DNA of 63,981 bases, counting the filler, from Octopus bimaculoides (lineage: Eukaryota), in the NCBI RefSeq assembly GCF_001194135.2. It is 5 parts of 3 records of this genome, joined end to end, with 100 filler letters (N's around TTAATTAATTAA, not from the genome) between each part and the next. Parts side by side here need not be neighbours in the genome. Positions count along the whole stretch, not along the records: positions 1 to 30,009 come from NC_068985.1; 4 more parts are not named here. The stretch is one strand, 5' to 3'. The notes beneath the pieces were generated by a model. It saw only the letters and a list, made by a program, of their open reading frames with translations, was not told the origin of the DNA and ran no database searches. Below are positions 3,651-29,092 of the stretch, in pieces; position 1 is the stretch's first letter, and each line of letters begins with the position of its first letter. The translations under genes were made by a program, and so were the position numbers.

Positions 3651-3709
3651 TTAGCTCTTTCTTTGTCAATATCTTCATTGTCCAGGTCGTTCAAAAGATC
3701 TCTGTAACG
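3651..3709 (-). CDS. Novel repeat-protein gene, long exon A1 (59 nt; RYRDLLNDLDNEDIDKERA+AA)
   Basis: Minus-strand acceptor ttttgaatatttatag and donor gtaaat; phase 0 to phase 2; open frame; paralogous to exons at 16157 and 25285. Confidence 0.85.
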
Positions 3710-4574
3710 CTATAAATATTCAAAATAAAAGTATATGTTTAGAATCTTTATAATAAAATTAATGATTTAACATCTGTAGTTTTATTTTACTATGTAATTG
3801 ACACTTCAATCAAACTGGATATTGCCTGACTTCCTGAAGCAATTGGTTGTTTTGCTTCTCTACATCCACAGCAACATCAAATTTCAGACGTTTGATTCAA
3901 AAACAGACACAAACATTGGAATAATTCCAGAACAAATTCTTTCAACCAACTTTATACTGTAGGAAAATTAAAGTAATAATTTCTAAACAAAGCACAAGAT
4001 CACACATTTTGTAGGAGTCTAGTTATTTGCCCACAGAACTCAACTAATAAAGGAATGTGGTTTACTACTTAGGGTTTTAACTTCACAATTATAAAGTAAT
4101 GGCTTTGGTTCCTGGACCAAGAGGTACATTATGCCCCTGAGTAAAACAGTTCAGTATATTTCCCTCAGTCAACTTAGCTGACAATATGCAACAACTGAGT
4201 GGTGCTGGAGCACTCTCTCAATCCAATTATCATGTCCTCACTGTTAGGTGAAAGTAGGATGGTTGAGAAGTTGTTTGTATTGAATTGTCACTGAATAGAC
4301 ATATAAAACACTAAGTGAAAATATAGTTTCATGCTACCAGGTCATACTATTTTGTGTGAGATAGCTATGAGGTTATTTTTCTAAATACTTGACTAATATT
4401 ATTTTCTCAAGCCTGGAAAAGTGAAAGACAAAATTGACAAATTTGGGATTCAAAATCAGGCAATAACCCTCCAATTCATTAAAAGAAGTGGCAAAATATT
4501 TATTACACCTTGAATACAATTAAAAAAAAAATTAAAAGTTCTGCATATACTAGATATTGCAGTATCCAGATATA

Positions 4575-4962
4575 CTCTCTTTACTCTTTACTTGTTTCAG
4601 TCATTTGACTGCGGCCATGCTGGAGCACCGCCTTTAGTCGAGCAAATCGACCCCAGGGCTTATTCTTTGTAAACCTAGTACTTATTCTATCGGTCACCTT
4701 TTGCTGAACCGCTAAGTGACGGGGACATAAGCATCGGTTGTCAAGCGATGTTAGGGGGACAAACACAGACACACAAACACACATATATATACATATATAC
4801 GACGGGCTTCTTTCAGTTTCTGTCTACCAAATCCACTCACAAGGCTTTGGACGGCCCGAGGCTATAGGAGAAGACACTTGCCCAAGATGCCACGCAGTAG
4901 GACTGAACCCGGGACCATGTGGTTGGTAAACAAGCTACTTATCACACAGCCACTCCTATGCC
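4575..4962 (-). mobile_element. tRNA-derived SINE, abundant family 1
   Basis: Head gtggctgtgtg..aagtagcttg, internal TA tract, tail cagtcaaatgactgaaacaagtaaaagag; short TSD tatact; empty site in the paralogous intron at ~17030. Confidence 0.88.
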
Positions 4963-6952
4963 TATACTATTTGTGTAAAAAAAAAAAAAAGAAGACAAAA
5001 TGTTATCACTTTCAGCAACCTTTCTCAATCAGAACTGACCATTATTAAGCTTTACTGATTGAATGCACCCATATCCAGCCTGAATATTCTAACTGTTTTA
5101 TATTCACACCAACTACATCTGACTTCCCAACTACATCATCAAGTCTCTTCCTCTTAATGCTGCATCAAATTACCAATATTGAAAAGATGTGTAGAATTCC
5201 AAAACAAAGTAGAGAAGTAAAATATGTTTGGAGAATGAAATAAATCTAATCTCTAGTCCCTAACAGAGAAGGACCCTCACAGAAGGCAGCATATAATCAT
5301 TTCATTTGTTTAATTATAGGAACTAAATTGTCATCAATTATCATCTCTGAAATAGCATCAGCTTATATGAAGTTCTTCAATTTCAGACAATGATCCAAAA
5401 GAAAGATAATACTTTTATGATTTTTTTATAAGTTTCTCAAATGAGGCAAGTTAGTTTCCATGACATTTTGGTAGCCCTGCCTCAGACTTGTAAGAATTTC
5501 AGTGTAGGATGTTCAGCCTGAATAACTGAAGGTAAAAAATGAAACCCAAACTGTTGGTAATCTTTATCACCACATGAGTGAAAATGAGGAATTGTACATT
5601 AAATGTTTCTGCTGCTGCTGCTACTACTGCTACTGCTGCTGCTACTTCCATCGACAACCAAAACCATTACTACTACTACCACTACATTCACCAGAGGACT
5701 ATTGCTTTGTCAACTGACATTGTTGCAAGTGTCACCTGTGATTAGGCTGCGGCCCAATTTTAGACAACATGAAGAGATTATCTGTTGAATTAATCCCAAC
5801 ACTGACATGAATTGAAGTAGAGGAAGGACAAACTCTGAATAAAAATTAAAAAAAACACCACCTGCACTGGATTTGATCCTATGACTTAAGAGTATGCAAT
5901 CCAATATTTTATTCCCACAACCATAGCATTTCTGCAGGTGTATATACTTTGGCAGTTTATAATTAAATAATACCAGATTTAGTAACAAATTAGTTACTTT
6001 TAGCTCTGTTTTAATTGTTTAGCCCTAGGTCAGTCCTCCTCCAGTAGACCTATTATCCCAGAAGAACGTTTCTTATGACTAAACCCAAAAAGGATACTTT
6101 TGCAGGGCCTCCATCACTGGTAGGAAAAGGTGAGGATGGAACCATTGATTGTTTGGTATCATCAGACCATTTATCTCAAGTGAATGCTTACTACAGGAGG
6201 AATTCCACCGAATGCATCACTGGTACAGCTGATGGTATTAGAATGGAGTAGGGATCAAATCTAACACCAAAGAACAAGTAAAGTTCATGCAAAAGAGCTT
6301 GCTGCTACCAAATTTCATACACGACATTTGGCTTAACCCCAGGTTAGGGGTTGAGTATTGAGATTGAACCTGAAATCACACAATTCCTAAGAAAACTTTT
6401 TAAATGCATATCAATGCTTGTGCCTGCTTTGTGGCTGTGAAAGTGGATGGCTGTATTTTAAATGGGAGTGAGTATTGTTGGGTGGGTAAAAACGTTCAAT
6501 TTGAAACCACATGGTTCCTGATTCAATCCCAATGCACAGCACCTTGGGCAAGTGTTTTCTACCACAGTTATTGTTTGACCAATTCCTTGTGAATAAAATT
6601 TGGTAGATGGAAACTGTGTAGAAGACCAGCTGTTGCATGTACATTGAAGCCTCCCTCTGTCTACAGCACAATGTTATCTAAGGAAAAGACAAAGGCCAAT
6701 ACAGTTTCACAGTATGGCTGTGAGAAGGGAAAGGGCAGGATGAGATATCACAAGGCATCCAATCAAGTGTTTTAACAATCCTGGACTGCTATTATTATTA
6801 TTACCAAATTCAAAAAGGGAAAGGTACAATTAACTGCATTGATATTTGAACTCAGAATGTAGACAACCAAGACAAATACCGCAAAGCCTTCTACATGATG
6901 CTCTTATCACTCTGCCAATATACTGCACAGTAAATAAATCATATCAACTAAC

Positions 6953-6986
6953 CTCGCGTTCTTTAAAGTGTCTCCCTACCAGTTCC
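6953..6986 (-). CDS. Novel repeat-protein gene, short exon (34 nt; G+ELVGRHFKERE)
   Basis: Acceptor tgtttcttttgcag, donor gttagt; phase 2 to 0; same length and invariant TTT codon as the five other short exons. Confidence 0.85.
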
Positions 6987-7629
6987 CTGCAAAAGAAACA
7001 AACATATTTTTATCATATTGTAATCACCATCATTACTTCTACATTAGCTCACAAAAAGAACCATTACAGAATTATTATTTTGTGTTTGTACATTTTAATA
7101 TTTTAATCTAAATCTACAATTCATTTGAATAGGTTCAATCTCTAATTATCACCAGGCATCATATTTGTTGATGTCTGTAGTGTATCAATCTGGAATGTAT
7201 TTGAATTATAAGTCATTTGAAGACCTTCATCCATCAATAATCTTTAGAGAACGTTGAAGGTTTTTGCAGATTTTCTTCTAAATATATTTGAACGAGTTTT
7301 TATGGACATTTATAGGTGAATAGTATTATTCTTTCTACTTTTTTTTTTATTATCATTGCTGGTGCACATGAATGTTTTAGATTCAGAATCAGTGTTCTTG
7401 ATAATTGGTCACAAGGAGTTTCCTTAGATGTCAAGGACCTTTCTTACAATCCTTGCTCTTCCCAATACAGCAGATTTCAGAATTGATGCAATTCTGGTTT
7501 TGTTCTTGACAATTGCTGATCATTTCAATGTGAACTGGGGAAAGAAATAATCTTGAACAGAAAATTCCTCCCCTGTCTCTGTTCTGTGTGTGTATGGAAT
7601 AGGCTTGAACCTTCTTTTCCTTGCAGTTA

Positions 7630-9385
7630 ATCATCATGATTGTTTAACATCTGCTTACCATGCAGGCATGGGTTGGATGGTTTGACCGAAAACTGGTAAG
7701 CCAGGGAGCTGCATCAAGCTCCAACCTGATTTGGCAAGGTTTCTATGGCTGAATGCCCTTCCTAACATCAATCACTCCAACAGTGCAGTGGGTGCTTTTG
7801 CATACCACTGGCATGGGTGCCATTGATATGATACCAGCATCAGCCATGTCTATGATCTCACTTGGCTTAACGGGTCTTCACAAACACAGTATATCACCAA
7901 AGGTCTTGCTCACTTGTCACTGCCTCCGTGAAGTCCAATGCTTGAACAGTATTTTTTACATGCGACTGGTATGAGTGCCAGTTAGATGGCACTGGCATTG
8001 GCCACAACTATGATCTCACTAGGCTTGTCAGATTTTCTCAAGCACAGCATATCGCCAAAGGTCTCAGTTACTTACCATTGCCTCTGTGAGGCACAACTAT
8101 CAAAGATCATGCCTGATCACTTCGGCCCATATCTTTCTGGGTCTGTTTCTTCCACAGGTTTCCTCCACCATTAGAGGGCAGCACTTCTGGCCTTGTCCAT
8201 GAGCATCATATGACCATACCCATGCAGTCATCTCTCTTGCACACCATATCTGATACCTCTTATACCCAACTTTTCTGTCAAGATGCTTACACTGTCGTGC
8301 ATGCACACTGATATTACACATCCAGTAGAGCCTACGAGATTCATATCTTACAAGCCTATGCATGCCCTCGGCAGTCACTGTTTCACTGCCATGTAGCATG
8401 GCTATTTGCACCTAAGCATCATACAATCTTCCACAGCAGAGGTAGGAGCTCTTTGAACTTTGCTCAGCCTATTCTTCTTCTAACGGCTATGTACTTGGAG
8501 CATCTGACTTGGCCACCTACCTTCCACACACAAAAGCTATTTTCCCTGTTAACCTTCCTCTGATATTGCTGCACATCTTATGTGTCTATAGCTTACACTG
8601 GATACAACTTATGGAGTTTCTACCTTCATATTTTCTACAGATCGAGCAGGGCCATCTACCTAAAGGGATGTGTGATTTGTCTGTCTTTCTACTTACTAAG
8701 GCTTTGGTTTTTGGTACGTTAACTCTAAGGCCCTTCGATTCTAGACCTTGCTTCCACACCTGAAACTTTTCTAGTTCTGGAAGTGATTCAGTTATAAGAA
8801 CAAGGTCATCAGCATAGAGGAACTCCCAGGGGCAGCCTCTCTTGAATTTCTCAGTTATTGCCTAGAGGACTATGATAAACAAGAGGGGGCTGAGGACTGA
8901 TCCTTGGTGAACCCCTACCCCTACCTGGAATTCTTCGCTATACTCGTTGCCAACCCTCACCTTACTGACCACATCCCTGTACTTGGCTTGTACAGCTCTC
9001 ATCAATCACTAGTCAATCCCTAGTTTCTGCATTGACCATCAGATAAGAGAATGAGGGACCATGTCAAAGGCTTTTTCCAAGTCAACAAAAGCCAAGTACA
9101 AAGGATTATCTTTGGTTAGGTATTTCTCCTGCAGCTGTTTTACCAGAAATATAGCATCAGTGGTGTTATTCTCAGCACAAAACCCAACTGCATCTCATCC
9201 AGACTAACTCTCTCGCTAATTAGTTGGGTTATGACTCTCTCTGTGACTTTCATTAATTGATCCAACAATTTGAAACCTCTGTAATTATTTCTAAAGCAGC
9301 ACCTTTACTTTTGTAGCAGTTGACTATGGTGCTGCTACACCACTCATTGGGTATGACTCTTTTGTGTACCATCTGGTTAAATATA
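7630..9385 (-). mobile_element. RTE LINE fragments (RT domain ~8780-9385, C-terminus ~8100-8500, 3' UTR with GAT-type tail)
   Basis: Minus-strand remnants of the KAFD and GVHQGSVLSPLLF motifs; AMLHGSET; same family as 1355-2130. Confidence 0.8.
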
Positions 9386-9600
9386 TACAAACAAAAATAG
9401 TATATTTAAAGTTGCATAACCAGGACTTACTGCAGTTGAAACATATATATTTAATGTTGTCTCATATCAACAATGTCATGGCTTCTACTATTTCCCAGAT
9501 TTATACATCCTGACATCATTACAATATTTATATACATCACAGCTTCTACATAATTAAAGGTAAAAATTAAATTCAAGCAGAATCTTATAAAATTACTTAC

Positions 9601-9665
9601 AGAGCTTCCTTCTTTTTTATAGAGTATGGATAGTTCTGCATTTCCTTTTCGAAATCTTCATATGA
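9601..9665 (-). CDS. Novel repeat-protein gene, long exon B1 (65 nt; SYEDFEKEMQNYPYSIKKKEA+CT)
   Basis: Acceptor ttgtaatcgtttctag, donor gtaagt; phase 0 to 2; paralogous to 20171 and 27799. Confidence 0.88.
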
Positions 9666-10040: not shown

Positions 10041-10427
10041 AGGCATGGCTGTGTGGTAAGAAGTCTGTTTCCCCAACCACAAAGTTACAGGTTCAGTCCC
10101 ACAACATGTAACCACAGGCAAGTGTTTTCTACTATAGCTTTGGGTTGACCAAAGTCTTGAAAGTGGATTTGGTTACAGAGACCGAAAGAAGCCTGCCACA
10201 CATGTGTGTGTGTGTGCATCTTTGTTTGTCTTGAACCACTGCTTGACAATCAGTGCTGGTGTGCTGATGCCCCGATAACCTAGCAGTCCACCAAAAATGA
10301 TCAACAGAATAAGTACCAATCTTAAAAACAATAGGTACAGGGGTTGATACATTCCACTAAAAATTATGAAAAGTGGTACCCCAGCATGGCCACAGTTTAG
10401 TGACTGAAACAAGATGAAAGGTGAAAG
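10041..10427 (+). mobile_element. SINE family 1
   Basis: Same head and tail; matching insertion at 28240-28612 in duplication unit 3. Confidence 0.8.
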
Positions 10428-11486
10428 ATATATTGTATATTGCTGTATCAAGATACACAGTGAGTCCATTAGCTTCTATTCCAAAGGAAGAATGGGTACT
10501 TCTCCTACCAGCCACAAACTTTACCTCTGCCTATCAGAAAAAATTGTTGTATGTTGTGTTATCGGATGTGAAAAGATGGAAAGCTATGTTGACCTCAGCA
10601 CAATTTTGAATACAGAAATTAAAGAAAGGTGTTATGCTGTCATTTGATTGCTCAGCTAAATCTTCATCAACTATCATCCTTAAAATGTCTTAAGCAAGTT
10701 TGTTAGAAGGGGCAGGTAAGTTTCCTTGATATTTTGGTAGCGCTGTCTCAGACTTGTAAGAATTTCCAACCTCAACATCTGAAGGAAAAAACAAATGGAT
10801 GGAGAGGGAACTGCTGATTTGGTCCAAATGCATGAAAGTGAGAGAATTCATACAAAAGAAGCAGATGGTGGTGTTAAACTGGGTGGTATGCAAGGCCTGT
10901 AGCCAGTTTTCCTGATAAAACAATGGACTTTGATGAGAACCAAACAGCTGGTCATCTTATGTCCATATGAATGAAAATAACGACCTGTAGATTGGAAATC
11001 ATCATCATCATCATAGTTTTAACTTCCACATTTTATAGCTTTCGCGGGTTTGGCAGAATTCATTCATGTAGATGTTTTTTATAATGTGTTTCTTTGGTCA
11101 TTAGACTCCCATGGAAAGACAATTGGAGCTAAACAACAATAACTGTAATAACCACAAACAACAATAACCACAAACATCACAATCAATGCTGCTGCAGCTA
11201 CTGGTGGTGGTGGTGGTGGTGGTGATGGTGCTGCTGCTACCCCCCACTATTTTAAAAAAGGAATACCACCAGCATTTCACTTTCAAAAGCAAAGCAATGC
11301 TAAATCTAAAAACGACTGTTAAGGGCTCTGGTTTGAGATAAAATAGAGATGAGAGATAACAAGCCTGTGATCAGGATGCTTGTCTGTTTCAGCTCACATT
11401 AACAGAGGATCTACTAACTTATTTCCAACAGCTACACAAACTCAATATGCTGCCTCGTACAAAATAAATAAATAAGAAGAACTAAC

Positions 11487-11520
11487 CTTGTTACTTCCAA
11501 AATGTTTTTTTGCTATCATC
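11487..11520 (-). CDS. Novel repeat-protein gene, short exon (34 nt; G+MIAKKHFGSNK)
   Basis: Acceptor tttatttctttcacag, donor gttagt; phase 2 to 0. Confidence 0.85.
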
Positions 11521-14254
11521 CTGTGAAAGAAATAAAGGAACACATTATTATCACTATCGTGATAATCACCACAATCTTTACATCTTCAGACAAAGACAAA
11601 ATCCATATGATTATAATATTTTGTACAATTAATTCCATCTTTAGACATGAATTCTTTTTTAATGTTTGAACTTGGATTTGGAGTTCATTTCAATTACTTT
11701 AATCTCTGAACCTCATTAGGAGTTTTATTCTTGCCTATTAATATTTATCTCTCAGCAAAGACAGAAATACTGGTTTCAAATTTTGACACAAGGCCTGCAA
11801 TTTCGGGGGAGGGGTAAGTCAACTATATCAACTCCATTGATCAACTGGTACTTATTTTATCAACCTTGAATGGATGAATGGCAAAGTTAACCTTGGCAGA
11901 ATTCCTACTCAGGACGTGAAGATCGACAAAATGCTGCTAAGTATCACCACCATACCAAACACAGAAATATTGAACTGATGTCACTTCTGGCCTTACTAAT
12001 TGCATTATTGGTAAGACATATATGTCCTGATTCTTTGATTCTCATCAGTTTCCCACTTTGGAATTACGAAATCTTCATTCTATAGCATTATATTCATTCA
12101 TTTCTCACTCCATATGTAATCATTAACGTTTTTCAATATTCTTCCATCCCAACCTTTAGAACTTCGCAGTGTTTCGTGTACAAGGCCTTCCATAAATGCA
12201 TGGCATGTTATAAATGCAGTTTTACTGTTCCAACTGAAACAATGCAGATGGAGATGCATAAAATATACATTTTCATCTCAAAAGATGAAGTTAATAATCT
12301 GAAAATCTTATAATCACATCTGCAATAACTCATCTCAANNNNNNNNNNNNNNNNNNNNNNNNNNNNNNNNNNNNNNNNNNNNNNNNNNNNNNNNNNNNNN
12401 NNNNNNNNNNNNNNNNNNNNNNNNNNNNNNNNNNNNNNNNNNNNNNNNNNNNNNNNNNNNNNNNNNNNNNNNNNNNNNNNNNNNNNNNNNNNNNNNNNNN
12501 NNNNNNNNNNNNNNNNNNNNNNNNNNNNNNNNNNNNNNNNNNNNNNNNNNNNNNNNNNNNNNNNNNNNNNNNNNNNNNNNNNNNNNNNNNNNNNNNNNNN
12601 NNNNNNNNNNNNNNNNNNNNNNNNNNNNNNNNNNNNNNNNNNNNNNNNNNNNNNNNNNNNNNNNNNNNNNNNNNNNNNNNNNNNNNNNNNNNNNNNNNNN
12701 NNNNNNNNNNNNNNNNNNNNNNNNNNNNNNNNNNNNNNNNNNNNNNNNNNNNNNNNNNNNNNNNNNNNNNNNNNNNNNNNNNNNNNNNNNNNNNNNNNNN
12801 NNNNNNNNNNNNNNNNNNNNNNNNNNNNNNNNNNNNNNNNNNNNNNNNNNNNNNNNNNNNNNNNNNNNNNNNNNNNNNNNNNNNNNNNNNNNNNNNNNNN
12901 NNNNNNNNNNNNNNNNNNNNNNNNNNNNNNNNNNNNNNNNNNNNNNNNNNNNNNNNNNNNNNNNNNNNNNNNNNNNNNNNNNNNNNNNNNNNNNNNNNNN
13001 NNNNNNNNNNNNNNNNNNNNNNNNNNNNNNNNNNNNNNNNNNNNNNNNNNNNNNNNNNNNNNNNNNNNNNNNNNNNNNNNNNNNNNNNNNNNNNNNNNNN
13101 NNNNNNNNNNNNNNNNNNNNNNNNNNNNNNNNNNNNNNNNNNNNNNNNNNNNNNNNNNNNNNNNNNNNNNNNNNNNNNNNNNNNNNNNNNNNNNNNNNNN
13201 NNNNNNNNNNNNNNNNNNNNNNNNNNNNNNNNNNNNNNNNNNNNNNNNNNNNNNNNNNNNNNNNNNNNNNNNNNNNNNNNNNNNNNNNNNNNNNNNNNNN
13301 NNNNNNNNTAGCAATTTGTGAAAATATCTCAATTTCAAATTTCAATCTAAAAAAAAAAAAGAGAAAAATAAATTCATTCGTCCACCTACCCATCATATCC
13401 AGCCACTATTTGTTGTCAGGTTAGAGTATCACATCTATAGGGTCTAATCAGAAATGACCATCACTAGACTGCCTGACTGGATTTCCAAGAATGACCAACT
13501 GAGACAATATTCTTGCTCCAACCCTAGGTCTCCTTGAAGAGTTCATCTAGTGATTCTTTCCTGCAACATTCTAATGCAGTACCAGAGATGAAACTCTTCA
13601 ATGAGCAGAAGAAGAAGTTTGCCCTAAAGAGACTCCCTAGCCTCCAAGCTATGCACCTTGTCAAGTAACATTACTCTAGAGACCTTTTGGTACACTGTGG
13701 CATGAAAAGTTGCAGCAGAGACAGTAAAAAACCTAAAAACTAAGTCATATAAGAACTCTGGGTTTAAGCTAGACTCTGATATTAGGTTGACCAATAAAGT
13801 ACAAGATGGTATCAAAAAGTTTCCAGACTAGTTCTGTAGCATGCCAACAAATAGCAGTACAAAGTTACACATGCAGTGAGAGCTAGCAGTGACCTTTATG
13901 AGGCAGTGTGCAGATTGACATCTCAGTGTTTACTTTGTAAATTGTGGAATTTGTGTTTTTGTGATCACATGTATATTGTAGTCTGCGATTTTTTGTCAAT
14001 GGATAGGAAATTGGAACAAAGAGCCAATGTTTAGATATATAGATCTTTATATTGGTTTCAAATTTTGGCTCAAGACCAGCAGCTTTCTGAGAAAGCTAAG
14101 TCAATTACAATAACCCCAGTGGTCAAATGTTATTTATTCTCTCAATCCCAAAAGATGAAAAGCAAAGAATTTGAACCCAGAATGTAAAGATGCATGAAAT
14201 ACCAGTAAGCATTATGCTAAAGACTGCCAGCTTACCACCTTATATATGTATCTC

Positions 14255-14498
14255 TATTGTTATCATATTGTTATCATATTGTTATCATATTGTTATCATA
14301 TTGTTATCATATTGTTATCATATTGTTATCATATTGTTATCATATTGTTATCATATTGTTATCATATTGTTATCATATTGTTATCATATTGTTATCATAT
14401 TGTTATCATATTGTTATCATATTGTTATCATATTGTTATCATATTGTTATCATATTGTTATCATATTGTTATCATATTGTTATCTATATTGTTATCAT
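14255..14498. repeat. 11-bp minisatellite (TATTGTTATCA)n, ~22 copies
   Basis: Direct reading; explains the 11-aa periodic ORFs at 14190-14549. Confidence 0.95.
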
Positions 14499-15144
14499 AC
14501 TTATGCATCACAATTAGAGTGGAGTGAAAAATGCAACTTTCGAAATTAGTAACCAAGAACCGATATTTTGTTGCAAATTTGTGTTTAAAGAAAGGTGCAT
14601 AAAGATGTTTGTAATTAAATATTTTTTTCAGGCTTTGCAATGTAATTGAAAATTTTAAAAATCTCTATTTTTGGTTGAATTTTAGATCTTATGGATTATA
14701 AGTTGTAAGGAATACATATTTCTATGTAGCAGAATGCAAAACAGTAAATATAGTATCCTTAAGAGGTTGCATACCAAGTTTCAGTACAATTGACTAATAT
14801 CCTGAGGTTTCGCATTGACTATAAAGAGAATAGGAATGCGGACTTCTCTCCAGCGACACTGCAACAGTGGTTGCGTGTGGACAAACGTCGTACGTGTGTG
14901 AAGTTTTCTGCTTTGCTCCTTGACTTTAGGTCATTGTATTAAAATTAATGATCATTTTAAATTTAGTGTTGTTTACATTTAGTGAGGACTCATAAGCCAA
15001 TAATACATCGTGATACTGACTGCCCAATATTTGGTATTCTATGTGATTTAGTGAGCAAGTTTTGCCAACTTACAAGGACGTACTAAAATGTGTTTTATTT
15101 GAACGAGAAAAAAAAAAGAAGAATGTAGTTAAGAAAGATCCTTT

Positions 15145-15665
15145 AATTAAACAAATTGTCAAGATTGTAGCAGAAAAGATAATTCTTCTTTAGCAAAGGT
15201 ATCCATCCTTTGTGTTATGATTGAGTCAGTTAAACCGAAAATCTTTATCTAAAGTACCAAGCATTACTAAAATTTGTGAAAAATAGAAAAAATGTGCCAT
15301 TGTTTCAAACAAAGTGTAACGTGTTTAAAAACAATGCAACAAAAGATTTATTCGACATTTCCTGTTGCAAGTTCAACTCCTTTAAAAACTGTAGTTATAG
15401 TAGAGACAAAAAAAGTACCATAGAGAGAATAGGATCAATGGACAAATTGAAAAATGATCATTGATAGAATAGATCAAGCAGTATCTAAACAGAACATGCA
15501 GAGGCTAATTAGAAAGAATCAGTCAGATCACAGTCACCTTTCTATGTCAGCAAAGGAAAGTTTCAGATTTTTGGCTTAACTGGCTCAATCATAACACAAG
15601 GGATGGATGCTTTTTGCCAAAGAAGAATTATCTTTTCTGCTACAATCTTGACAATTTATTTAATT
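15145..15665. mobile_element. MITE-like element with ~100-bp terminal inverted repeats
   Basis: 15145-15244 is the reverse complement of 15565-15665 at ~90% identity. Confidence 0.75.
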
Positions 15666-16156: not shown

Positions 16157-16218
16157 TTAGCTCTTTCTCTGTCAATATATGGAAGACTGCACAGTTTATT
16201 CCAAAAATGTCCTAAACC
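16157..16218 (-). CDS. Novel repeat-protein gene, long exon A2 (62 nt; GLGHFWNKLCSLPYIDRERA+AA)
   Basis: Acceptor ttttgaatatttatag, donor gtaaat; phase 0 to 2. Confidence 0.85.
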
Positions 16219-18352
16219 CTATAAATATTCAAAATAAAAGTATATGTTTAGAATCTTTATAATAAAATTAATGATTTAACATATGCAGTTCTATTTTACC
16301 ATGTAACTGACGCTCCAATCAAACTGGATATTGCCTGACTTCCTGAAGCAATTGGTTGTTTTGCTTCTCTACATCTACAGCAACATCAAATTTCAGATGT
16401 TTGATTCAAAAACAGACACAAACATTGGAATAATTCCAGAACAATTCTTTCAACCAACATTGTACTGTAGGAAAATTAAAGTAATAATTTCTAAACAAAG
16501 CACAAGATCACACATTTTTCAGGAGTCTAGTTATTTGCCCACAGAACTCAACTAATAAAGGAATGTGGTTTATTACTTAGGGTTTTAACTTCACAATTAT
16601 AAAGTAATGGCTTTGGTTCCTGGACCAAGAGGTACATTATGCCCCTGAGTAAAACAGTTCAGTATATTTCCCTCCAGTCTACTTAGCTGACAATAAGCAA
16701 CAACTGAGTGGTGCTGGAGCCCTCTCTCACTCCAGCTACCATGTCCTCACTGTTGGGTGAAAGGTAGGATGGTTGAGAAGTTGTTTGTATCAAATTGTCA
16801 CTGCATAGACACATAAAACACTTAGGGAAAGTATAGTTTCATGCTACCAGGTCATATTATTTTGTGTGAGATAGCTATGGGGTTATTTTTGTAAATACTT
16901 GACTAATAAATATTTTCTGAAATCGGAAAAGATGAAAGACAAAATTGACAAATGTGAGATTCAAAATCAGGGAATAATCCTCCACTTCATTAAAAGAAGT
17001 GGCAAAACATTCATTGGATCTTGCAGTATCCAGATATTTGTGTAAGGAAAGAAGACAAAATGGTGACAGCTTCAGCAATATTGATGAAAGACAAAATTGA
17101 ATACTGTAGAATTCTTTCAAGTGTTCCCCTGTCCACTACATTCACAGCCCAAGTTTCACAACCTTTAGCATTGCTTTTCATACAGAGGTATCATATAATC
17201 AACCTTTCATTCTTGAAAGTGAGGTTTCTTGTTACCAACAGATGTAAAAGTTCTTTAATCTTCCTCCAGTTAATTAGTATTCTTGCAACAATACTTTCAG
17301 AGCATCCTTTTCCACGGCTAATTTCATTGCCTAGATTATAGAAACTATTTACTATTTCTAAGGAGACTTACTATTTACTGCACTTGCACATCTGCCACAA
17401 ACCTATTCCATTTTCTTCTGTTAACTTCCCTGTGATCCCACTGCACCTCCTATGTGCCCATAATCTGCAATGAGCATATGATAAGGGATCTCTATCTACA
17501 CCCGTGTACTTCTGGCCATTTACCTAAACGAATTAGTGTTCTGCCTGTTCTCCTCCTAATTAGAACTTTAGCCTTTGCTAAGTTATAAAAATAGAATACA
17601 TTTTTGTCTTTGAAATCAATGGTGCTGTGTGGCTGAAAATGTTTTTTTTATGGAAGACCAGGTGTTGCCTATGCATGTAATCCTTTGCAATGCTATAAAC
17701 TAGCACTTTGTCGGATACAATGACAAGAGTTCCAGGTGATCTGATCAACGGAACAGTTTGCTTTTGAAATTTATGTGCAAGTGGCAGAGTACCCCACAGA
17801 CACACATACTCTTAACGTAGTTCTCAGGGAGAGTTAGTGTGACACAGAATGTGATTAAGTTGGCTGCTTTTGAATTACAGATAGAACTCATACTTGTCAG
17901 CTCAGCTGAGTGAGCTAGTGGAACATGAAATAAAGTGTCTTGCTCAAGGACAATATGCCGTTGGGTATTGAGTTCATGGCCTTATGATCAGGAGCTGAAT
18001 ACCCTGATCACTAAGCCACATACAATCCTCTACCTCACCATACTAACAGTGTAGCCAAGGGAAATGTGAAGACTGATACAACTTGGTTTCAGTATCATCA
18101 GATGTTTCTGTCAGTAGCTAAAAAAAAAACAACAAAACAAACCAGAAAACCCTCATCTGAAGCTTTGTCAGTCTTTGTAATCCATTGCTCTCAGCTGGAA
18201 CTACTATTATCAAACAAAAAACAATGAAAATTAAAGTCACTTTTAAATGTTTGGAACTAAAACAAATACTGCAAGGCATTCTCTCTGACGCTCAAACTAA
18301 TTGGTCAATATAATGTCATACAAAAAAATAAATAAATAGAGTACCAACTAAC

Positions 18353-18386
18353 CTTCATGCATCTAAAATTTTTTCCTGATAATTTC
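18353..18386 (-). CDS. Novel repeat-protein gene, short exon (34 nt; G+KLSGKNFRCMK)
   Basis: Acceptor tatttcttttgcag, donor gttagt; phase 2 to 0. Confidence 0.85.
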
Positions 18387-20170: not shown

Positions 20171-20235
20171 TTTGCTTCCTTTGGGAGAACACTGTTTGGA
20201 AAATTACGTATTTCTTCTGCAAAATCTCTATATTC
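20171..20235 (-). CDS. Novel repeat-protein gene, long exon B2 (65 nt; EYRDFAEEIRNFPNSVLPKEA+AA)
   Basis: Acceptor ttgtaaacttttctag, donor gtgagt; phase 0 to 2. Confidence 0.88.
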
Positions 20236-21986: not shown

Positions 21987-22020
21987 CTTGATACTCTGAA
22001 AATATTTTTTCACCATATCA
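21987..22020 (-). CDS. Novel repeat-protein gene, short exon (34 nt; T+DMVKKYFQSIK)
   Basis: Acceptor tttatttcttttgcag, donor gttagt; phase 2 to 0. Confidence 0.85.
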
Positions 22021-22432
22021 CTGCAAAAGAAATAAATAAAAACACATTATTATCATTATCATCATTTTTATATCTTTAGACAAAGAGAAACATCATAAGA
22101 TTATAGCTTTTTGTACCATTAAATTTCGTATTTGGACTTGAATTTTTTTTTTTTTTTTTAAGATTTGAACCTAGATTTAGACATCATTTCAATTAGTTTC
22201 ATTTCTGACCTCATTAGGAGTTTTATCTTGGCTATATACATAGTATCAGACTAATGGTATTTGTCTCTCATCAAAGACAGTAATATTGAGTATGTCAATA
22301 CTGGCCTTACCAATGGTAAGAGGAATAGGTACCGAATCTTTGATTCTCATTAGTTTTCCACTTTTGAATTATGAAAACATTCCTTAGAATTATATTTATT
22401 GACACACACACATCACATACATACACAAACAT

Positions 22433-22476
<44 letters not shown>

Positions 22477-22639
22477 NNNNNNNNNNNNNNNNNNNNNNNN
22501 NNNNNNNNNNNNNNNNNNNNNNNNNNNNNNNNNNNNNNNNNNNNNNNNNNNNNNNNNNNNNNNNNNNNNNNNNNNNNNNNNNNNNNNNNNNNNNNNNNNN
22601 NNNNNNNNNNNNNNNNNNNNNNNNNNNNNNNNNNNNNNN

Positions 22640-22675
<36 letters not shown>

Positions 22676-23679: not shown

Positions 23680-24065
23680 GCTGGTGCTGGTGCAACATAA
23701 AAAGCATCCAGTGCACACTGGAAAGTGGTTGGTGTTTGGAAGAACATCCAGCTGTAAAGCAGACTACACAAGCACTGGTACCACATGAGAAGCACCCAGG
23801 CCACTTCGTAAAGTAGTTAACATTAGGAAGGGCATCCAGTCATAAAAACCATGCCAAAACAAACCTTGCTGGTGCTAGTGCCATGTAAAAGGCATCCTGT
23901 CCACTCTGTAAGGTGGTTGACATTATGAAATGCATCCAGCTATAAAAACAATGTCAAAACAAACAGTAAAGCATGGAGCAGTTCTTTGGATTGCCAACTC
24001 CTGTTCAAACTGTCTGACCAATACCAGCTGGGAAAATGGATATTAAATGATGATGATGATGATAT
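23680..24065 (+). mobile_element. RTE 3' UTR-derived fragment
   Basis: aggaagggcatccag...catg...gatgatgat tail, as in 30700-31042. Confidence 0.7.
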
Positions 24066-24069
24066 ATGA

Positions 24070-24123
<54 letters not shown>

Positions 24124-24169
24124 GCACACACATACATATACATGTGTGTGTCTGTCCCCTACCATCACT

Positions 24170-24720
24170 TGACAACTGGAGGACTATGATGAATAAAAGG
24201 GGACTGAGGGTTGAACCTTGGTGGACCCCCTACTTCTACCCGGAATTCTTCACTATACTCATTGCCAATCCTAACCTTACTAATGGCCTCTCTGTATAGG
24301 ACCTGTACAGCCCTTATTAACCATTCATCAATCCCCAGTTTCTGCATCGCCCACCAGATAAGGGATCGGGGGACCCTATCAAAGGCTTTCTCCAAGTTAC
24401 AAAAGCTAAGTATAGGGGTTTATCTTTAGCTAGGTATTTCTCCTGCAGTTGTCGAACTAGGAATATGGCACCAGTGGTGCTTCTACCCGGCACAAAACTG
24501 AACTGTATCTCATCTAAGCAGACTTTCTCTCTAATGAGATGGGCTGTGACCCTCTCCGTGACCTTCATCACCTGATCCAGTAGTTTGATACCCCTGTAGT
24601 TATTTCTATTTAGAGCATCATCTTTACTCTTGTAGCAGTTGACTATGGTGCTGCTATGCCAGTCATTGGGTGAATTACCTGGTTTACACTGCGGATGACT
24701 AGGCCATAGCCCACACCACC
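24170..24720 (-). mobile_element. RTE LINE reverse-transcriptase fragment
   Basis: FVPGRSTTGAIFLVRQLQEKYLAKDKPLYLAFV and MEKAFDRVPRSLIWWAMQKLGIDEWL...EFRVEVG. Confidence 0.9.
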
Positions 24721-25050
24721 AGATGTCTTAAGCATAAATGGCACCCATGCTGGTGACATGTAAAACGAACCCTTGGAATGTTGGGCCCCATGGAGAAGAT
24801 GACAAGTGACTGAGACTGTTGATAATATGTCATGCTTAAAAAGACTCAGTTGCAGCTGGTGTCGGTGTCACTTAAATGGCATGTGAAAAGCACCCATTAC
24901 ACAGTTGAAGTGGTTGGCGTTAGGAAGAGCATCCAGCCACAGAAATCATTCTAAATCAAACAGGAACTTTGTGCAGTTCTCTGGCTCATCAGTTTCAGTC
25001 AAACCATCTAACCCATGCCAACATGGAAAGCACGCCATCACCGCCACTAC
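24720..25050 (+). mobile_element. RTE 3' UTR-derived fragment
   Basis: gtggttggcgttaggaagagcatccagc...aacccatgcc family motif. Confidence 0.65.
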
Positions 25051-25284
25051 CATTGTCGTCACCATCAAAGTAAATAAATTAATAAGATGTTTAATAAAAG
25101 CTGCATAACTAGGACTTACTGAAGTTGAAATACTGAATATATATCTTTAGTATAGACTATCATGGCTTCTCTAAATATTTTTAACACATAAATCCTTAAA
25201 TCATAATCACATTCATATATCACAGTTTCCTCATCTAATTGAAACCACTACCAAACTTGAACAAGACATAATAAAATTACTTAC

Positions 25285-25346
25285 TCATTATCTTCTCTGT
25301 GATACTTTTGAAGTTCATAGAGTTTCTTTGAAAACTTTCTATAACC
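25285..25346 (-). CDS. Novel repeat-protein gene, long exon A3 (62 nt; GYRKFSKKLYELQKYHREDN+GA)
   Basis: Acceptor ttttgaatatttgcag, donor gtaagt; phase 0 to 2. Confidence 0.88.
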
Positions 25347-27000
25347 CTGCAAATATTCAAAATGAAAGCATATGTTTAGACTTTATAATAAAATTAATGA
25401 TTTAACATATGCAGTTCTATTTTACCATGTAATTGACTCTTCAATCAAACTGGATATTGCCTGACTTCCTGAAGCAATTGGTTGTTTTGCTTCTCTACAT
25501 CCACAGGAAGATCAACCTTCAGATGTTTGATTCAAAAACAGACAGAAACGTTGGAATAATTCCAGAACATATTCTTTCAACCAACATCGTACTGTAGGAA
25601 AATTAAAGTAATAATTTCTAAACACTGCACAAGATCACACATTTTGTAGGAGTCTAGTTATTTGCCCACAAAACTCATCTAATAAAGGAATGTGGTTCAC
25701 TATTTAGGGTTTTAACTTCACAATTATAAAGTAATGGCTTTGGTTCCTGGACCAAGAGATACATTATGCCCCTGAGTAAAACAGTTCAGTATATTTCCCT
25801 CCAGTCTACTTAGCTGACAATATGAAACAACTGAGTGGTGCTGGAGCACTCTCTCACTCCAGCTACCATGTCCTCACTGTTGGGTGAATGGTAGGATGGT
25901 TGAGAAGTTATTTGTATCAAATTGTCAATGCATAGACACATAAAACACTTAGTGAAAGTATAGTTTCATGCTACCAGGTCATACTGTTTTGTTGGGTAGC
26001 TATGGGGTTATTTTCCTAAATACTCGACAAATATTATCTTCTGAAATCTGGTAGGATGAAAGACAAAATATTTATGTATATGTTTGTGCATTTGAATTTG
26101 TCCCCCTACCATTGCTTGACAACCAATGTTGGTGTGTTTAGATCCCTGTAACTTAGCAATTTGTTAAAGCAGACTGATAGAATAAGTACTTGGCTTACAA
26201 AAAATAAGCCCTGGGAAATAGCAGGATGAGATATTACAAGGCATCCAATCTGTTGTTTGAACAATTCTGAACTGCTGCTATCATTATTAAATTCAAAAAG
26301 TGAAGACAAAGGTAGTGTCACCACAAGCATGGCTGTGAGAAGGGAAAGAGCAGGATGAGATATCACAATGCATCCAATCAGGACTGCTACTATTTTTATC
26401 AAATTCCCAAAGTGAAAGGTACAATTAACTTCATTGATATTTGAACTCAGAATGCAGACAACCAAGACAAATACTTCAAAGTCTTCTATCTGATGCTCTA
26501 ATCACTCAGTGGATCTTTTCTGTTTGGTTTCATGTTTTGGAATTTTAGAATTAAAAGATTTTCAAATTTGTTATGTAATTTTTCATGTTGAATCTGGTGA
26601 TGTTCTTCACTTTTTCCAGAAAGATTTTGAGGAATGACATACTAGATAATGGTAGTCCTAGAAAACTTTTGGTCATAGGTCTGACTGATAAAAACATTCC
26701 TCTTCAGTTTTCACTTTCTCCATCATATTCGAGTTGGTGACAAATGGGTAAGCAGACTACACAACAACTTGGCTTGTTACTATTCATACAGGAAACACTA
26801 TGTCTGTGGCATTTGACAAGCTAAAATTACCCAAAATTCATTTCTTATTTTAAGGCAAAAATGAATTTCATTTCCACCACATCAATACACCAAATGTGAA
26901 TCAAGTGGAACAAAATTAAAGGAATTGAAAAGTGAAAGCCAAACAGAAACAACCCAAGTCAGCCAATACACTGCACAGTAAATAAATCATATCAACTAAC

Positions 27001-27034
27001 CGTATAATTTTTAAAGTATTTTTCTGCAAGTTTC
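27001..27034 (-). CDS. Novel repeat-protein gene, short exon (34 nt; G+KLAEKYFKNYT)
   Basis: Acceptor tgtttcttttgcag, donor gttagt; phase 2 to 0. Confidence 0.85.
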
Positions 27035-27798
27035 CTGCAAAAGAAACAAACATGTATTTTCATCATGTCATCACAATCATAATAGTTATTTCTACATCAA
27101 CTCACAAAAAGAAACTTTATGTCAGTACAACATACAAGCAGTGGTGCATACATCACATAAAAAACTCAAATGCTAATGCCATGTATAAAGCAACTGGTAC
27201 AGTCTGTAAAGTGGCTGGCCCGAGGGAAAGCATCCAACTGAAGAAACCATGCCAAAACAGATGACTAGAGACTGCTGTAGTTTTCTGGCTTGCCAGCTTC
27301 TATTAAACAATCTGACCCTTAACAGAGACTTATGTGGAACCAGCACAGGTGCATTTTATGTGCCACTGACACAGGTGCTTCTCACTTGGCAATGAGAAAG
27401 GAAAATTTTAATTTTAATCAGTGTTTAAAACGTTTATTGTTCAATTCATTTCAATGTGAACTGTGGAAAGAAATGATTCTGAATTGAAATCCCACCCCCT
27501 TATTCTGTTTCTCCCCTGTCTCTGTTCTGTGGGTGTATGGAATAGGCTTGAGCCTTTTGTCTTGCAGTTAAGTACATACAAACAAAAATAGTGTATTAAA
27601 AGTTGCATAACCAGGACTTACTGAAGTTGAAATACTGAACATATAGATTCCATGTTGTCTCATATCAACAATGTCATGGCTTCTCTTACTATTTCCTACA
27701 TTTATATTTCCTAATATCGTTATCATATTTATACAACACAAGCTCCTCATAATTCAAAGTCAAAATCAAACTTAAGCAGATATTGTATAATCACTTAC

Positions 27799-27863
27799 TT
27801 GGCATCTTGACTTCCAATATCCATTTTATACTTATTAATATCCCCTTCGAAATCTTCATATGA
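27799..27863 (-). CDS. Novel repeat-protein gene, long exon B3 (65 nt; SYEDFEGDINKYKMDIGSQDA+AA)
   Basis: Pyrimidine-rich acceptor ending ctag, donor gtaagt; phase 0 to 2; visible inside ORF-track entry 27791-28009. Confidence 0.88.
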
Positions 27864-28239
27864 CTAGAAAAAATTACAATAAAAGCATATGTTGTAACTT
27901 TATAATAAAAAGCAAATGACTTAACATTAACAGTTCTATTTTGGACTGGTTTTGACTCTTCAATGAAACAAAACATTACCTGACTCACAGAAACACTTTC
28001 AAAAAACAAAACTAATCCTTTTCTCTATACATTCTAACTTCCAGGAAAGAGCTGAAATCATTGACTGATGGGGGATATTACCTAACTTGAGAAGTGATGC
28101 AGTAAAAGGATGTAATATAATACTACAAGGCATTTAATCTTGCATTGTCAACTGATTCTGATATTTCCTTCTTAAAAAGAGATTCTATGTAGCCACTAAA
28201 AGATAGCAGCAAATATCTCTCTTACAACTTTAAAAAAAA

Positions 28240-28612
28240 AAGCGTAGCTTTGTTATAAGAGGCTTGTTTCATAAACACATGGTTGCAGGTTCAATCTCAC
28301 AGCATGCCACCTTGGCAGGTGTTTTCTACTCTAGTGTCGGACTGACCAAAGTTTTGAGAGTGGACTTGATTGACAAAAACTGAAGAGGCCTGTCATATGT
28401 ATGTGCATGCATACATGTGTGTGTTTGTGTGTGAGAGACATGTTGTGTCTGTGTTTGTCCCCACCCACTACTTGATAACTGGTGTTCGTGTATTTATGTT
28501 CCCATAACTTAGCAGTTCAGCAGCAATAACTAATAGAGTAAGTACCAATTCCACTAAAAATTCTGAAAGAAAGTGCCTCAGCATGGCCACAGTCTAACGA
28601 CTGAAAAAAAGT
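28240..28612 (+). mobile_element. SINE family 1
   Basis: Same position relative to the long exon as 10041-10427. Confidence 0.78.
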
Positions 28613-29058
28613 AGTCCTCAAAAGATATAAGAATTCATTCACGTAGATGTTGTTTTTACAGTGTAAGGATTTAATGTGTTTCCTTGGTCTTTAGACTCTC
28701 ATGGAAAGACAATTGGGACTAAACAACAATAACTGTAATAGTAACAACAATAACCACAAACATCACAACCAATGCTGCTGCTGAAGCTACTGGTGGTGGT
28801 GGTGCTGCTACCCACCACTATTTTAGAAAAAGAAGACCTTCCAGAAATTCACCTTAAAGAGCGAAACAATGATAAATCTAAAAACGACTGTTAAGGGTTC
28901 CGGTTTGAGATAAAACAGAAATGAGAGATAACAAGCCTGTGGTTAGGATGCTTGTCTGTTTCAACTCACATTAACAGAGGATCTACTAACTTATTTCCAA
29001 CAGCTACACAAACTCAATATGCTGCCTCGTACAAAATAAAAAAGTAGTGAGAACTAAC

Positions 29059-29092
29059 CGTGTAACTGCCAAAATATAATTTTGCTAGAAAT
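29059..29092 (-). CDS. Novel repeat-protein gene, most 5' visible short exon (34 nt; A+FLAKLYFGSYT)
   Basis: Acceptor ttcttttgcag, donor gttagt; phase 2 to 0; no start codon exon found upstream. Confidence 0.83.

What the first reader, a model, noticed from the sequence alone, without database searches (positions are those of the whole stretch)
3651..29092. Hidden 12-exon gene encoding an unrecognised ~33-aa tandem repeat protein
Six 34-nt exons (phase 2 to 0) alternate strictly with six 59-65-nt exons (phase 0 to 2) on the minus strand, all with AG/GT ends. Spliced in order they give 582 nt without a stop: xFLAKLYFGSYT-SYEDFEGDINKYKMDIGSQDAK-KLAEKYFKNYT-GYRKFSKKLYELQKYHREDND-DMVKKYFQSIK-EYRDFAEEIRNFPNSVLPKEAK-KLSGKNFRCMK-GLGHFWNKLCSLPYIDRERAK-MIAKKHFGSNK-SYEDFEKEMQNYPYSIKKKEAL-ELVGRHFKERE-RYRDLLNDLDNEDIDKERA. 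An invariant Phe (codon 7 of every short exon) and a mostly conserved Y-x-x-F-x-x-x-(I/L/M) pattern suggest a small amphipathic helical module (inference). The exons are too short for the ORF track, and I cannot match the repeat to a known family.
Basis: partly seen in the sequence, partly recalled or inferred. Interest (0 to 1): 0.92.

Follow-up and report, generated by a model that had tools for sequence, protein, structure and literature searches.

The report
Octopus helical-repeat gene fragment, already annotated

Summary
Observation confirmed. All 12 minus-strand exons exist at the stated places, with AG acceptors, GT donors, alternating phases 2-0 and 0-2, and 582 nt without a stop.

Interpretation partly right. 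The gene is not hidden. The spliced peptide is 100% identical to RefSeq XP_014787007.2, "uncharacterized protein LOC106881217" of Octopus bimaculoides.

It is not a complete 12-exon gene either. Assembly gaps bound the window on both sides, and the same exon pairs continue upstream. The Octopus sinensis ortholog (LOC115212235) is 1,935 aa and spans about 310 kb. It has four N-terminal UBA-like domains, about 33 of these repeats, a C-terminal domain and an Ala/Lys/Glu-rich tail.

The 34-nt plus roughly 60-78-nt exon-pair design also holds for most repeats in Argonauta hians.

The repeat is still unrecognised. It has no Pfam or PDB sequence match and no Foldseek match. AlphaFold2 predicts two short helices per repeat.

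Homologues were found only in Octopoda. The function, an elongated helical scaffold possibly linked to ubiquitin, is inference.

One side finding is unexplained. A roughly 700-nt intron segment before every second long exon is 90-95% identical across at least 7 units, while the adjacent exons are only 47-71% identical. This suggests intron homogenisation by gene conversion.

The parts
29059..29092 (-). Exon 1, short type (34 nt, phase 2 to 0), encodes (K)FLAKLYFGSYT
27799..27863 (-). Exon 2, long type (65 nt, phase 0 to 2), SYEDFEGDINKYKMDIGSQDA. It is closer to the neighbouring upstream unit than to its positional ortholog, so it was probably converted.
27001..27034 (-). Exon 3, short (34 nt), KLAEKYFKNYT
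25285..25346 (-). Exon 4, long (62 nt), GYRKFSKKLYELQKYHREDN
21987..22020 (-). Exon 5, short (34 nt), DMVKKYFQSIK
20171..20235 (-). Exon 6, long (65 nt), EYRDFAEEIRNFPNSVLPKEA
18353..18386 (-). Exon 7, short (34 nt), KLSGKNFRCMK
16157..16218 (-). Exon 8, long (62 nt), GLGHFWNKLCSLPYIDRERA
11487..11520 (-). Exon 9, short (34 nt), MIAKKHFGSNK
9601..9665 (-). Exon 10, long (65 nt), SYEDFEKEMQNYPYSIKKKEA
6953..6986 (-). Exon 11, short (34 nt), ELVGRHFKERE
3651..3709 (-). Exon 12, long (59 nt), RYRDLLNDLDNEDIDKERA. The RefSeq model ends here by reading through the donor (AA|GTAAAT read as AAG TAA). The ortholog continues with further repeats.
3710..4407 (-). Copy of the ~700-nt homogenised intron element directly upstream (in gene sense) of exon 12
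16219..16918 (-). Copy of the same intron element upstream of exon 8
25351..26042 (-). Copy of the same intron element upstream of exon 4
12339..13308 (.). Assembly gap inside the intron between exons 8 and 9
22477..22639 (.). Assembly gap inside the intron between exons 4 and 5. It is bordered by an (AC)n microsatellite on one side (TRF) and by a TA-type dinucleotide run on the other, the latter read from ORF translations only.

Best explanation
**What it is (shown).** The window is an internal 30-kb piece of one very large protein-coding gene of Octopus bimaculoides, on chromosome record CM046605.1 at about 4.70-4.74 Mb, minus strand. RefSeq already annotates this piece as LOC106881217, a fragmentary model cut by assembly gaps. 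The intact ortholog, O. sinensis LOC115212235, encodes 1,935 aa. It has four UBA-like domains, about 33 tandem repeats of 31-33 aa, a C-terminal domain with no family match, and an Ala/Lys/Glu-rich tail.

**Gene structure (shown).** Each repeat is encoded by an exon pair: 34 nt followed by 59-65 nt. Both outer boundaries are in phase 2, so every pair is a 93-99-nt in-frame module. The pairs alternate between two types, A (33 aa) and B (31-32 aa). This gives a 4-exon, roughly 65-aa higher-order unit, of which the window holds three.

**How the array evolved (inferred).** It grew by tandem duplication of these modules through recombination between similar introns. The six repeats in the window were already individually distinct before the O. 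bimaculoides / O. sinensis split.

**Protein structure (predicted).** Each repeat forms two short alpha-helices. Helix A is roughly xxAKKLAxKYF and spans the long-to-short exon junction. Helix B is roughly xYxDFxxEL. A Pro-containing loop follows. The conserved aromatic and aliphatic residues are inferred to form the helix-helix core; no model coordinates were available to check this.

**Function (inferred, low confidence, about 0.25).** The roughly 1,100-residue array is a long alpha-helical spacer or multivalent protein-binding scaffold between the UBA-like heads and the C-terminal domain. It may act in a ubiquitin- or p97-type adaptor role.
For: **Identity**
- The spliced peptide is 100% identical, at 100% coverage, to XP_014787007.2.
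- The window equals L001:11283-41291 reversed and is flanked by N runs on both sides.

**The array continues beyond the window**
- More exon pairs lie upstream in L001.
- More lie in the next RefSeq locus, LOC106881215, about 9 kb further up on the same strand.
- Window 11-191 and 730-1237 match the intron regions that precede exons 1, 5 and 9. The next short exon therefore falls in the left-hand gap.

**Ortholog**
- P0003 scores E 1.4e-275 and is 1,935 aa.
- It has about 31-33 repeats and Pfam UBA_4 and UBA_8 matches above threshold.
- The gene spans 310 kb.

**Positional orthology**
- Repeats 2-6 match their positional partners at 64-78% identity, against at most 53% for any other repeat.
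- The two lineages split about 34 Mya (PMC10700109).

**Real coding exons**
- The splice and phase pattern and the chance tests support this.
- The same exon-pair structure, with the same 34-nt short exons, holds for most repeats in Argonauta hians.

**Structure**
- AlphaFold2 gives mean pLDDT 77.5 with two helices per repeat.
- Conserved positions are L2, A3, Y6, F7, Y13, F16, F40, Y46 and L53.
Against: **Missing evidence**
- No transcript evidence could be examined here.
- The inter-repeat arrangement in the model is uncertain (pTM 0.43).

**Signs of weak constraint**
- Identity to the ortholog is only 68%.
- Non-synonymous and synonymous differences between paralogous exons are of similar size. 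Most positions are therefore weakly constrained.

**The functional reading rests on parts outside the window**
- The UBA-like domains lie outside the window.
- The SEP-like resemblance in the C-terminal domain is not supported by Pfam.
- It is only a 20-residue BLASTP match, E 0.017.
- That domain's model is unusable (pLDDT 38.8).

**Uninformative searches**
- Two word-indexed homology searches returned nothing, not even the known relatives.
Confidence: 0.85

Rival explanations
1. One reading: a self-contained, previously unannotated 12-exon gene encoding a protein of about 193 aa.
For: The 12 exons splice cleanly into an open frame. The current RefSeq model is only 207 aa.
Against: - RefSeq already holds the model.
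- Exon 1 begins and exon 12 ends in mid-codon.
- The model's Met lies inside an upstream B-type long exon. Its stop is read-through of exon 12's donor, a sequence that exon 8 uses as a normal donor.
- The window is bounded by gaps.
- The ortholog runs straight through this region as residues 1152-1345 of 1,935.
Confidence: 0.03
2. The array, or this part of it, is decaying or non-functional. On this view the exon-like modules are still predicted by gene finders but are not under protein-level selection.
For: - Differences between paralogous exons are about as frequent at non-synonymous as at synonymous sites.
- Identity to the O. sinensis ortholog is only 68%.
- No expression data were available here.
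Against: - The frame is open over 582 nt, with a chance probability of about 5e-6.
- All 24 splice sites and all phases are intact.
- Hydrophobic core positions are conserved across 23 double repeats from three species.
- The exon-pair architecture and 34-nt exon length are kept in Argonauta.
- Repeats match one-to-one across a split of about 34 My.
Confidence: 0.05
3. The repeat is a very divergent member of a described helical repeat or domain family. Candidates are TPR-like repeats, or a truncated derivative of the protein's own UBA-like domains.
For: - There is a weak TPR_18 match, E 0.019 and 15.6 bits.
- Each unit of about 33 residues is predicted to form two helices.
- The 'IDKERAK-LAxKYF' start resembles, by eye, the 'TDExxAKxxLxKxxW' helix of the UBA-like domains (my inspection).
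Against: - The TPR_18 score is below Pfam's cut-off of 21.9 bits.
- No family is hit by more than one of 23 double repeats.
- hhalign against a consensus TPR gives probability 0.06. Against the four UBA-like domains it gives 0.08.
- The profile search of the PDB gives nothing better than E 0.019.
- The best Foldseek hit has E 2.6 and TM at most 0.23.
Confidence: 0.12
4. An alternative for the intron/exon contrast only. On this view the units were amplified recently, and the exons then diverged explosively under diversifying selection. The introns were not homogenised by gene conversion.
For: - Exons are 47-71% identical while the flanking intron is 90-95% identical.
- pN is 0.35-0.55 and is usually at least as high as pS.
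Against: - Synonymous differences in the same exons, pooled pS about 0.3, are roughly five times the intron divergence of about 0.06.
- Other intron parts of the same units are saturated at 47-58% identity.
- The repeats were already distinct before the split of about 34 My.
- Similarity decays gradually at both ends of the element, like a conversion tract.
- Exon 2 shows a post-speciation conversion signature.
Confidence: 0.2

Closest known systems
RefSeq LOC106881217 (XP_014787007.2, O. bimaculoides) and its ortholog LOC115212235 (XP_036358878.1, O. sinensis), both named 'uncharacterized protein'
   Same: The first is the same gene, with a 100% identical peptide and the same junctions. The second is collinear, with 68% identity over residues 1152-1345.
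   Different: The O. bimaculoides model is a gap-truncated fragment of 207 aa. The upstream neighbour model LOC106881215 lies on the same strand and carries the same kind of repeats, so it looks like another piece of the same gene. Searches by gene and protein identifier found no paper that mentions these genes.
Alpha-hairpin tandem repeats (TPR, 34 aa; also HAT, PPR and Sel1-like repeats)
   Same: Repeats of about 33 residues that are predicted to form two helices, with conserved hydrophobic positions.
   Different: - There is no TPR signature or significant match.
- The helices are shorter, about 12 and 10 residues, with an 8-residue Pro-containing loop.
- Units alternate between 33 and 31-32 aa.
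- There is no Foldseek match to any solenoid.
p47/NSFL1C-type adaptors (UBA-like domain followed by a SEP domain)
   Same: The ortholog has N-terminal UBA-like domains (Pfam UBA_4 and UBA_8). It also has a short C-terminal motif, LDLILYKNGVLFDGG...GERP, that resembles the first hairpin of the p47 SEP domain (BLASTP E 0.017 over 20 residues; query verified as p47).
   Different: - Neither a SEP nor a UBX domain was detected by Pfam.
- There are four UBA-like domains instead of one.
- A repeat array of about 1,100 residues is inserted between the ends.
- None of these parts lies in the window.
Genes built from symmetrical-phase exon modules, such as the 99-nt ankyrin-repeat exons or the nebulin super-repeats (my own knowledge, not tested here)
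   Same: There is a fixed exon set per protein repeat, and every module is in frame. This favours tandem expansion by unequal recombination. A higher-order unit is also present.
   Different: Here each repeat is split into two exons of 34 and 59-65 nt. The split falls in the turn between the two helices. The paralogous introns are far more alike than the exons.

Membership tests
Spliced protein-coding gene | Canonical AG/GT boundaries, compatible phases and an open frame beyond chance | tested here: met
   6 sites against 0.12 expected; probability about 5e-6.
Spliced protein-coding gene | Exon structure conserved in other species | tested here: met
   The Argonauta hians locus L003 shows the same 34-nt short exons alternating with phase 0-2 long exons of about 60-78 nt in most repeats.
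Spliced protein-coding gene | Transcript reads across the junctions | not testable with these tools
   No RNA-seq resource was available. The RefSeq model exists, but its supporting evidence could not be inspected.
RefSeq LOC106881217 / ortholog group of O. sinensis LOC115212235 | Identical or collinear protein sequence | tested here: met
   100% identity and coverage to XP_014787007.2. Repeats 2-6 each match their positional ortholog best.
TPR repeat | Score above the Pfam gathering cut-off, or profile similarity to the 34-aa TPR consensus | tested here: not met
   TPR_18 scores 15.6 bits against a cut-off of 21.9. None of 23 double repeats hits a TPR family. hhalign probability is 0.06.
UBA-like domain (PF14555 / PF22566) | The repeats in the window match the UBA-like profile | tested here: not met
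   There is no Pfam hit in the window peptide. hhalign of the repeat profile against the protein's own four UBA-like domains gives probability 0.08. The ortholog's N-terminus does match, but it lies outside the window.
SEP domain (p47 family), in the ortholog's C-terminal domain | Pfam SEP match or SEP fold | tested here: inconclusive
   There is no Pfam hit at E up to 10. BLASTP against the p47 SEP domain gives a 20-residue match with E 0.017. The AlphaFold2 model has pLDDT 38.8 and is unusable. The profile search of the PDB shows no SEP protein.
Any solved fold (PDB) | Significant Foldseek or sequence match of the repeat region | tested here: not met
   The best Foldseek hit has E 2.6 and TM at most 0.23. 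phmmer and the profile search against the PDB give no significant hit.

The most novel reading that the evidence does not exclude
The repeat is a new alpha-helical repeat family restricted to Octopoda, or to cephalopods. It forms an array of about 1,100 residues in a giant protein that carries UBA-like domains. The array shows an unusual evolutionary regime. Long intron segments are kept 90-95% identical across at least 7 tandem units by ongoing gene conversion. The 60-nt exons they abut are kept different, which would imply selection for diversity among repeats, for example a multivalent scaffold with distinct binding sites.
Probability: 0.45. Interest if true: 0.45.

Novelty: new member of a known kind. 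Interest (0 to 1): 0.3.

Why it matters
For annotation, several short 'uncharacterized' RefSeq loci of O. bimaculoides (LOC106881215, LOC106881217 and probably others) look like pieces of one gene of about 1,900 aa that assembly gaps have broken up. The same seems true in Argonauta hians.

For biology, the gene adds a lineage-restricted helical repeat that no family database describes. It is attached to UBA-like domains, which makes it a candidate octopod innovation in ubiquitin-linked scaffolding.

The contrast between near-identical introns and strongly diverged exons within one tandem array is a clean natural case for studying gene-conversion tract limits and selection on repeat diversity.

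None of this overturns current knowledge. It is a modest finding, mostly descriptive.

Tried and rejected
**Searches that gave nothing**
- Two word-indexed homology searches, with the 495-aa old model and with the repeat profile, returned nothing, not even the known relatives. They are uninformative rather than negative.
- The C-terminal domain of the ortholog gave a poor AlphaFold2 model (pLDDT 38.8), so no fold search was run on it.
- The N-terminal 383 aa of the ortholog has no PDB sequence relative.
- DNA of the O. sinensis gene could not be fetched because its range is too long. Orthologous dN/dS and the intron phylogeny could therefore not be done.
- Searches by gene and protein identifier found no paper.

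**Ideas tested and dropped**
- SEP domain: not supported by Pfam or the PDB profile search, and only weakly by BLASTP.
- The repeat as a UBA-like derivative or as TPR: rejected.

**The conserved intron element**
- It has no ORF, no Rfam family and no unusual RNA stability (z -0.78).
- It has no counterpart in the Argonauta locus. It is therefore not a deeply conserved functional RNA.
- A TE insertion is unlikely. All copies sit at the same position relative to the exon, and similarity decays gradually at both ends.

**Other**
- The N-terminal exons of the old 495-aa RefSeq model map to repeated intron sequence and are probably spurious.
- Staggered MAFFT alignments of overlapping repeat segments (A2, A3) were discarded in favour of an in-register 8-row alignment.

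Full report
**1. The observation**

The window is AT-rich (GC 36%) and has two internal N runs.

With their flanks they show six 34-nt exons and six exons of 59-65 nt. Each follows a pyrimidine tract and an AG. The donors are GTTAGT for all short exons and GTAAGT, GTGAGT or GTAAAT for the long ones.

Short exons start with the third base of a codon, and long exons end after the second base. Each short-plus-long pair is therefore 93-99 nt and in frame. The spliced 582 nt has no stop.

This is far beyond chance:
- The short-exon pattern occurs 6 times, all on the minus strand, against 0.12 expected.
- One of 200,000 random same-length segment sets is stop-free.
- DNA profiles of the exons find exactly these 12 sites.

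**2. The assembly gaps**

Both gaps lie in introns, between exons 4 and 5 and between exons 8 and 9. The phases match across them. The O. sinensis ortholog has the corresponding repeats directly adjacent, so no exon is expected in the gaps.

Frame alone cannot exclude a hidden pair, because a pair is a multiple of 3 nt. The smaller gap abuts an (AC)n microsatellite.

**3. What it is**

The spliced peptide is 100% identical to XP_014787007.2, 'uncharacterized protein LOC106881217' of Octopus bimaculoides, 207 aa. The gene is therefore annotated, not hidden.

The window equals CM046605.1 at about 4.70-4.74 Mb, reversed, and is bounded by N runs on both sides.

The RefSeq model is a fragment:
- Its Met lies inside an upstream B-type long exon (KYEDFLEDMFCLPSIDTERA).
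- Its stop is read-through of exon 12's donor, the same AA|GTAAAT that exon 8 uses as a donor.

Another 4-exon unit lies upstream in the fetched locus. The next RefSeq locus, LOC106881215, lies about 9 kb further up on the same strand and carries the same kind of exons.

Window 11-191 and 730-1237 resemble the introns that precede exons 1, 5 and 9. The next short exon should therefore sit in the gap just beyond the left edge.

**4. Relatives**

A full HMMER scan of 1.84 billion representative proteins, using the older 495-aa model as query, found five relatives:
- the 1,935-aa O. sinensis protein XP_036358878.1 (E 1.4e-275)
- three fragmentary Argonauta hians proteins
- the O. bimaculoides neighbour model

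All are octopods. No hit at E up to 0.001 came from any other animal, although I could not check which cephalopod proteomes the library holds.

The O. sinensis protein has:
- four UBA-like domains (Pfam UBA_4 and UBA_8, above threshold)
- about 31-33 repeats between residues 384 and 1442
- a C-terminal domain with no family match
- an Ala/Lys/Glu-rich tail

Its gene spans 310 kb.

Window repeats 2-6 each match their positional counterpart, residues 1185-1345, at 64-78% identity. The best match to any other repeat is at most 53%. The repeats were therefore already individually distinct before the two lineages split about 34 Mya (PMC10700109).

**5. Exon architecture across Octopoda**

In the Argonauta hians locus, most of the 26 mapped exons alternate in the same way. 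Short exons of 11 codons plus one base, with GTTAGT or GTCAGT donors, alternate with long exons that end in phase 2.

The split of each repeat into a 34-nt exon and a longer exon is therefore old and conserved. This is independent evidence that these are real exons.

**6. The repeat**

An alignment of 23 double units from three species gives this consensus:

xLAxxYFGxxxxYxxFxxExxxxPxxxxxxxAxxLxxxxFKxxxxYxxFxxxLxxxxxIDKExAx

A-type units (33 aa) alternate with B-type units (31-32 aa).

AlphaFold2, run with an 8-row in-register alignment, gives mean pLDDT 77.5 and pTM 0.43. It predicts two helices per repeat. One spans the long-to-short exon junction and ends at the conserved Phe. The other starts at the conserved Tyr of the long exon. 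A Pro-containing loop follows.

Nothing known matches:
- Pfam gives only sub-threshold, inconsistent hits.
- The PDB gives nothing by sequence or by profile.
- The best Foldseek hit against the PDB has E 2.6.
- hhalign against a consensus TPR gives probability 0.06. Against the protein's own UBA-like domains it gives 0.08.

The repeat belongs to the broad class of alpha-hairpin tandem repeats but to no described family.

**7. How it probably works**

Shown: this is a modular gene, an internal piece of a giant protein, and it encodes a two-helix repeat.

Inferred: the array expanded by unequal recombination between similar introns, since every exon pair is an in-frame module. The protein is a long helical scaffold or spacer linking the UBA-like heads to the C-terminal domain.

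A ubiquitin- or p97-adaptor-like role is suggested only by the UBA-like domains and by a weak SEP-like motif in the C-terminal domain (BLASTP E 0.017 over 20 residues against verified p47 SEP). Pfam, the PDB profile search and the structure model do not confirm SEP. I put this functional reading at about 0.25.

**8. An unexplained feature**

Paralogous exons are much less alike than their introns.

The ~700 nt upstream of every B-type long exon is 90-95% identical among four copies in this locus and at least three in the next one. Parts of it reach 99%. The adjacent exons are 47-71% identical. Other intron parts of the same units are saturated at 47-58%.

Synonymous differences in these exons, pooled at about 0.3, are roughly five times the intron divergence of about 0.06. 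Non-synonymous differences are 0.35-0.55.

The element has no ORF, no Rfam family and no unusual fold stability. It has no counterpart in Argonauta. Similarity decays gradually at both ends.

Exon 2 is closer to the neighbouring unit's exon than to its own ortholog.

The best reading is lineage-specific concerted evolution of introns by gene conversion, with the exons kept distinct. Recent amplification followed by explosive exon divergence is less likely, but it cannot be excluded without O. sinensis genomic DNA, which could not be fetched.

**9. Verdict**

The 'hidden gene' claim is not. The 'unrecognised repeat' claim holds with the tools available.

The gene model is already public, and searches by gene and protein identifier found no paper on it. 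The repeat is a new member of the alpha-helical repeat class, so far seen only in octopods. Interest is modest, 0.3. Its value lies in correcting the annotation, in a candidate new repeat family, and in the intron/exon divergence contrast.

Noticed in passing
window 3710-4407, 16219-16918, 25351-26042 (also L001 9322-9976; L002 6303-7008, 23008-23503, 34039-34589): A ~700-nt intron segment directly upstream of every B-type long exon is 90-95% identical across at least 7 tandem units, while the exons it abuts are only 47-71% identical. It has no ORF, no Rfam hit, no unusual RNA stability and no counterpart in Argonauta.
   Followed up: partly
window 27799-27863 (exon 2): This exon resembles the long exon of the upstream neighbouring unit, and that unit's O. 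sinensis ortholog, more than its own positional ortholog. This suggests a gene-conversion event after speciation that included an exon.
   Followed up: partly
window 1355-1771 (+) and 8100-8411 (-): Two ORF fragments with motifs that I recognise as typical of LINE reverse-transcriptase C-termini (…LHGRETWAM…RLERNE…YWMCNV…). They form an inverted pair at about 72% identity and look like decayed retrotransposon copies in introns.
   Followed up: no
window 4550-4953, 10046-10452, 28244-28545, 26069-26215, 6505-6616: An interspersed repeat occurs in both orientations within the introns at 68-75% identity. One copy holds a tRNA-like 'GGTCCCGGGTTCAG' stretch, which suggests a tRNA-derived SINE.
   Followed up: no
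window 14255-14499: A nearly perfect 11-bp tandem repeat (TATTGTTATCA, 22 copies, 99% matches) sits in the intron between exons 8 and 9.
   Followed up: no
window 22402-22476 and 24062-24150: An (AC)n microsatellite abuts the smaller assembly gap. A nearby low-complexity stretch (probably a dinucleotide repeat, not inspected) gives sub-threshold Rfam hits to mir-297 and mir-466 on both strands. These look like repeat artefacts, not miRNA genes.
   Followed up: partly
window 16950-17015 (L001 24277-24342) and L001 9187-9255, 5580-5633, 44574-44627: The N-terminal exons of the older 495-aa RefSeq model (MEIRKNRLLFNDKSLSLE, CNEYFATSFNEVEDYCLILNLTF) map to sequence that recurs in several introns of the array. 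They are probably spurious exons.
   Followed up: partly
window 15145-15244 and 15565-15665: An inverted repeat of about 100 nt with 91% identity, arms about 320 nt apart, in the intron between exons 8 and 9.
   Followed up: no
L003 28728-29098 and 38262-38632 (Argonauta hians): Two short exons (ELTKEYYGSHE, KRAKEYYGSHE) and their flanks are 95.7% identical. This looks like a recent duplication or conversion within the Argonauta array. The Argonauta gene also seems split into several partial models (Ahia01_000159400, 159500 and 159800).
   Followed up: no
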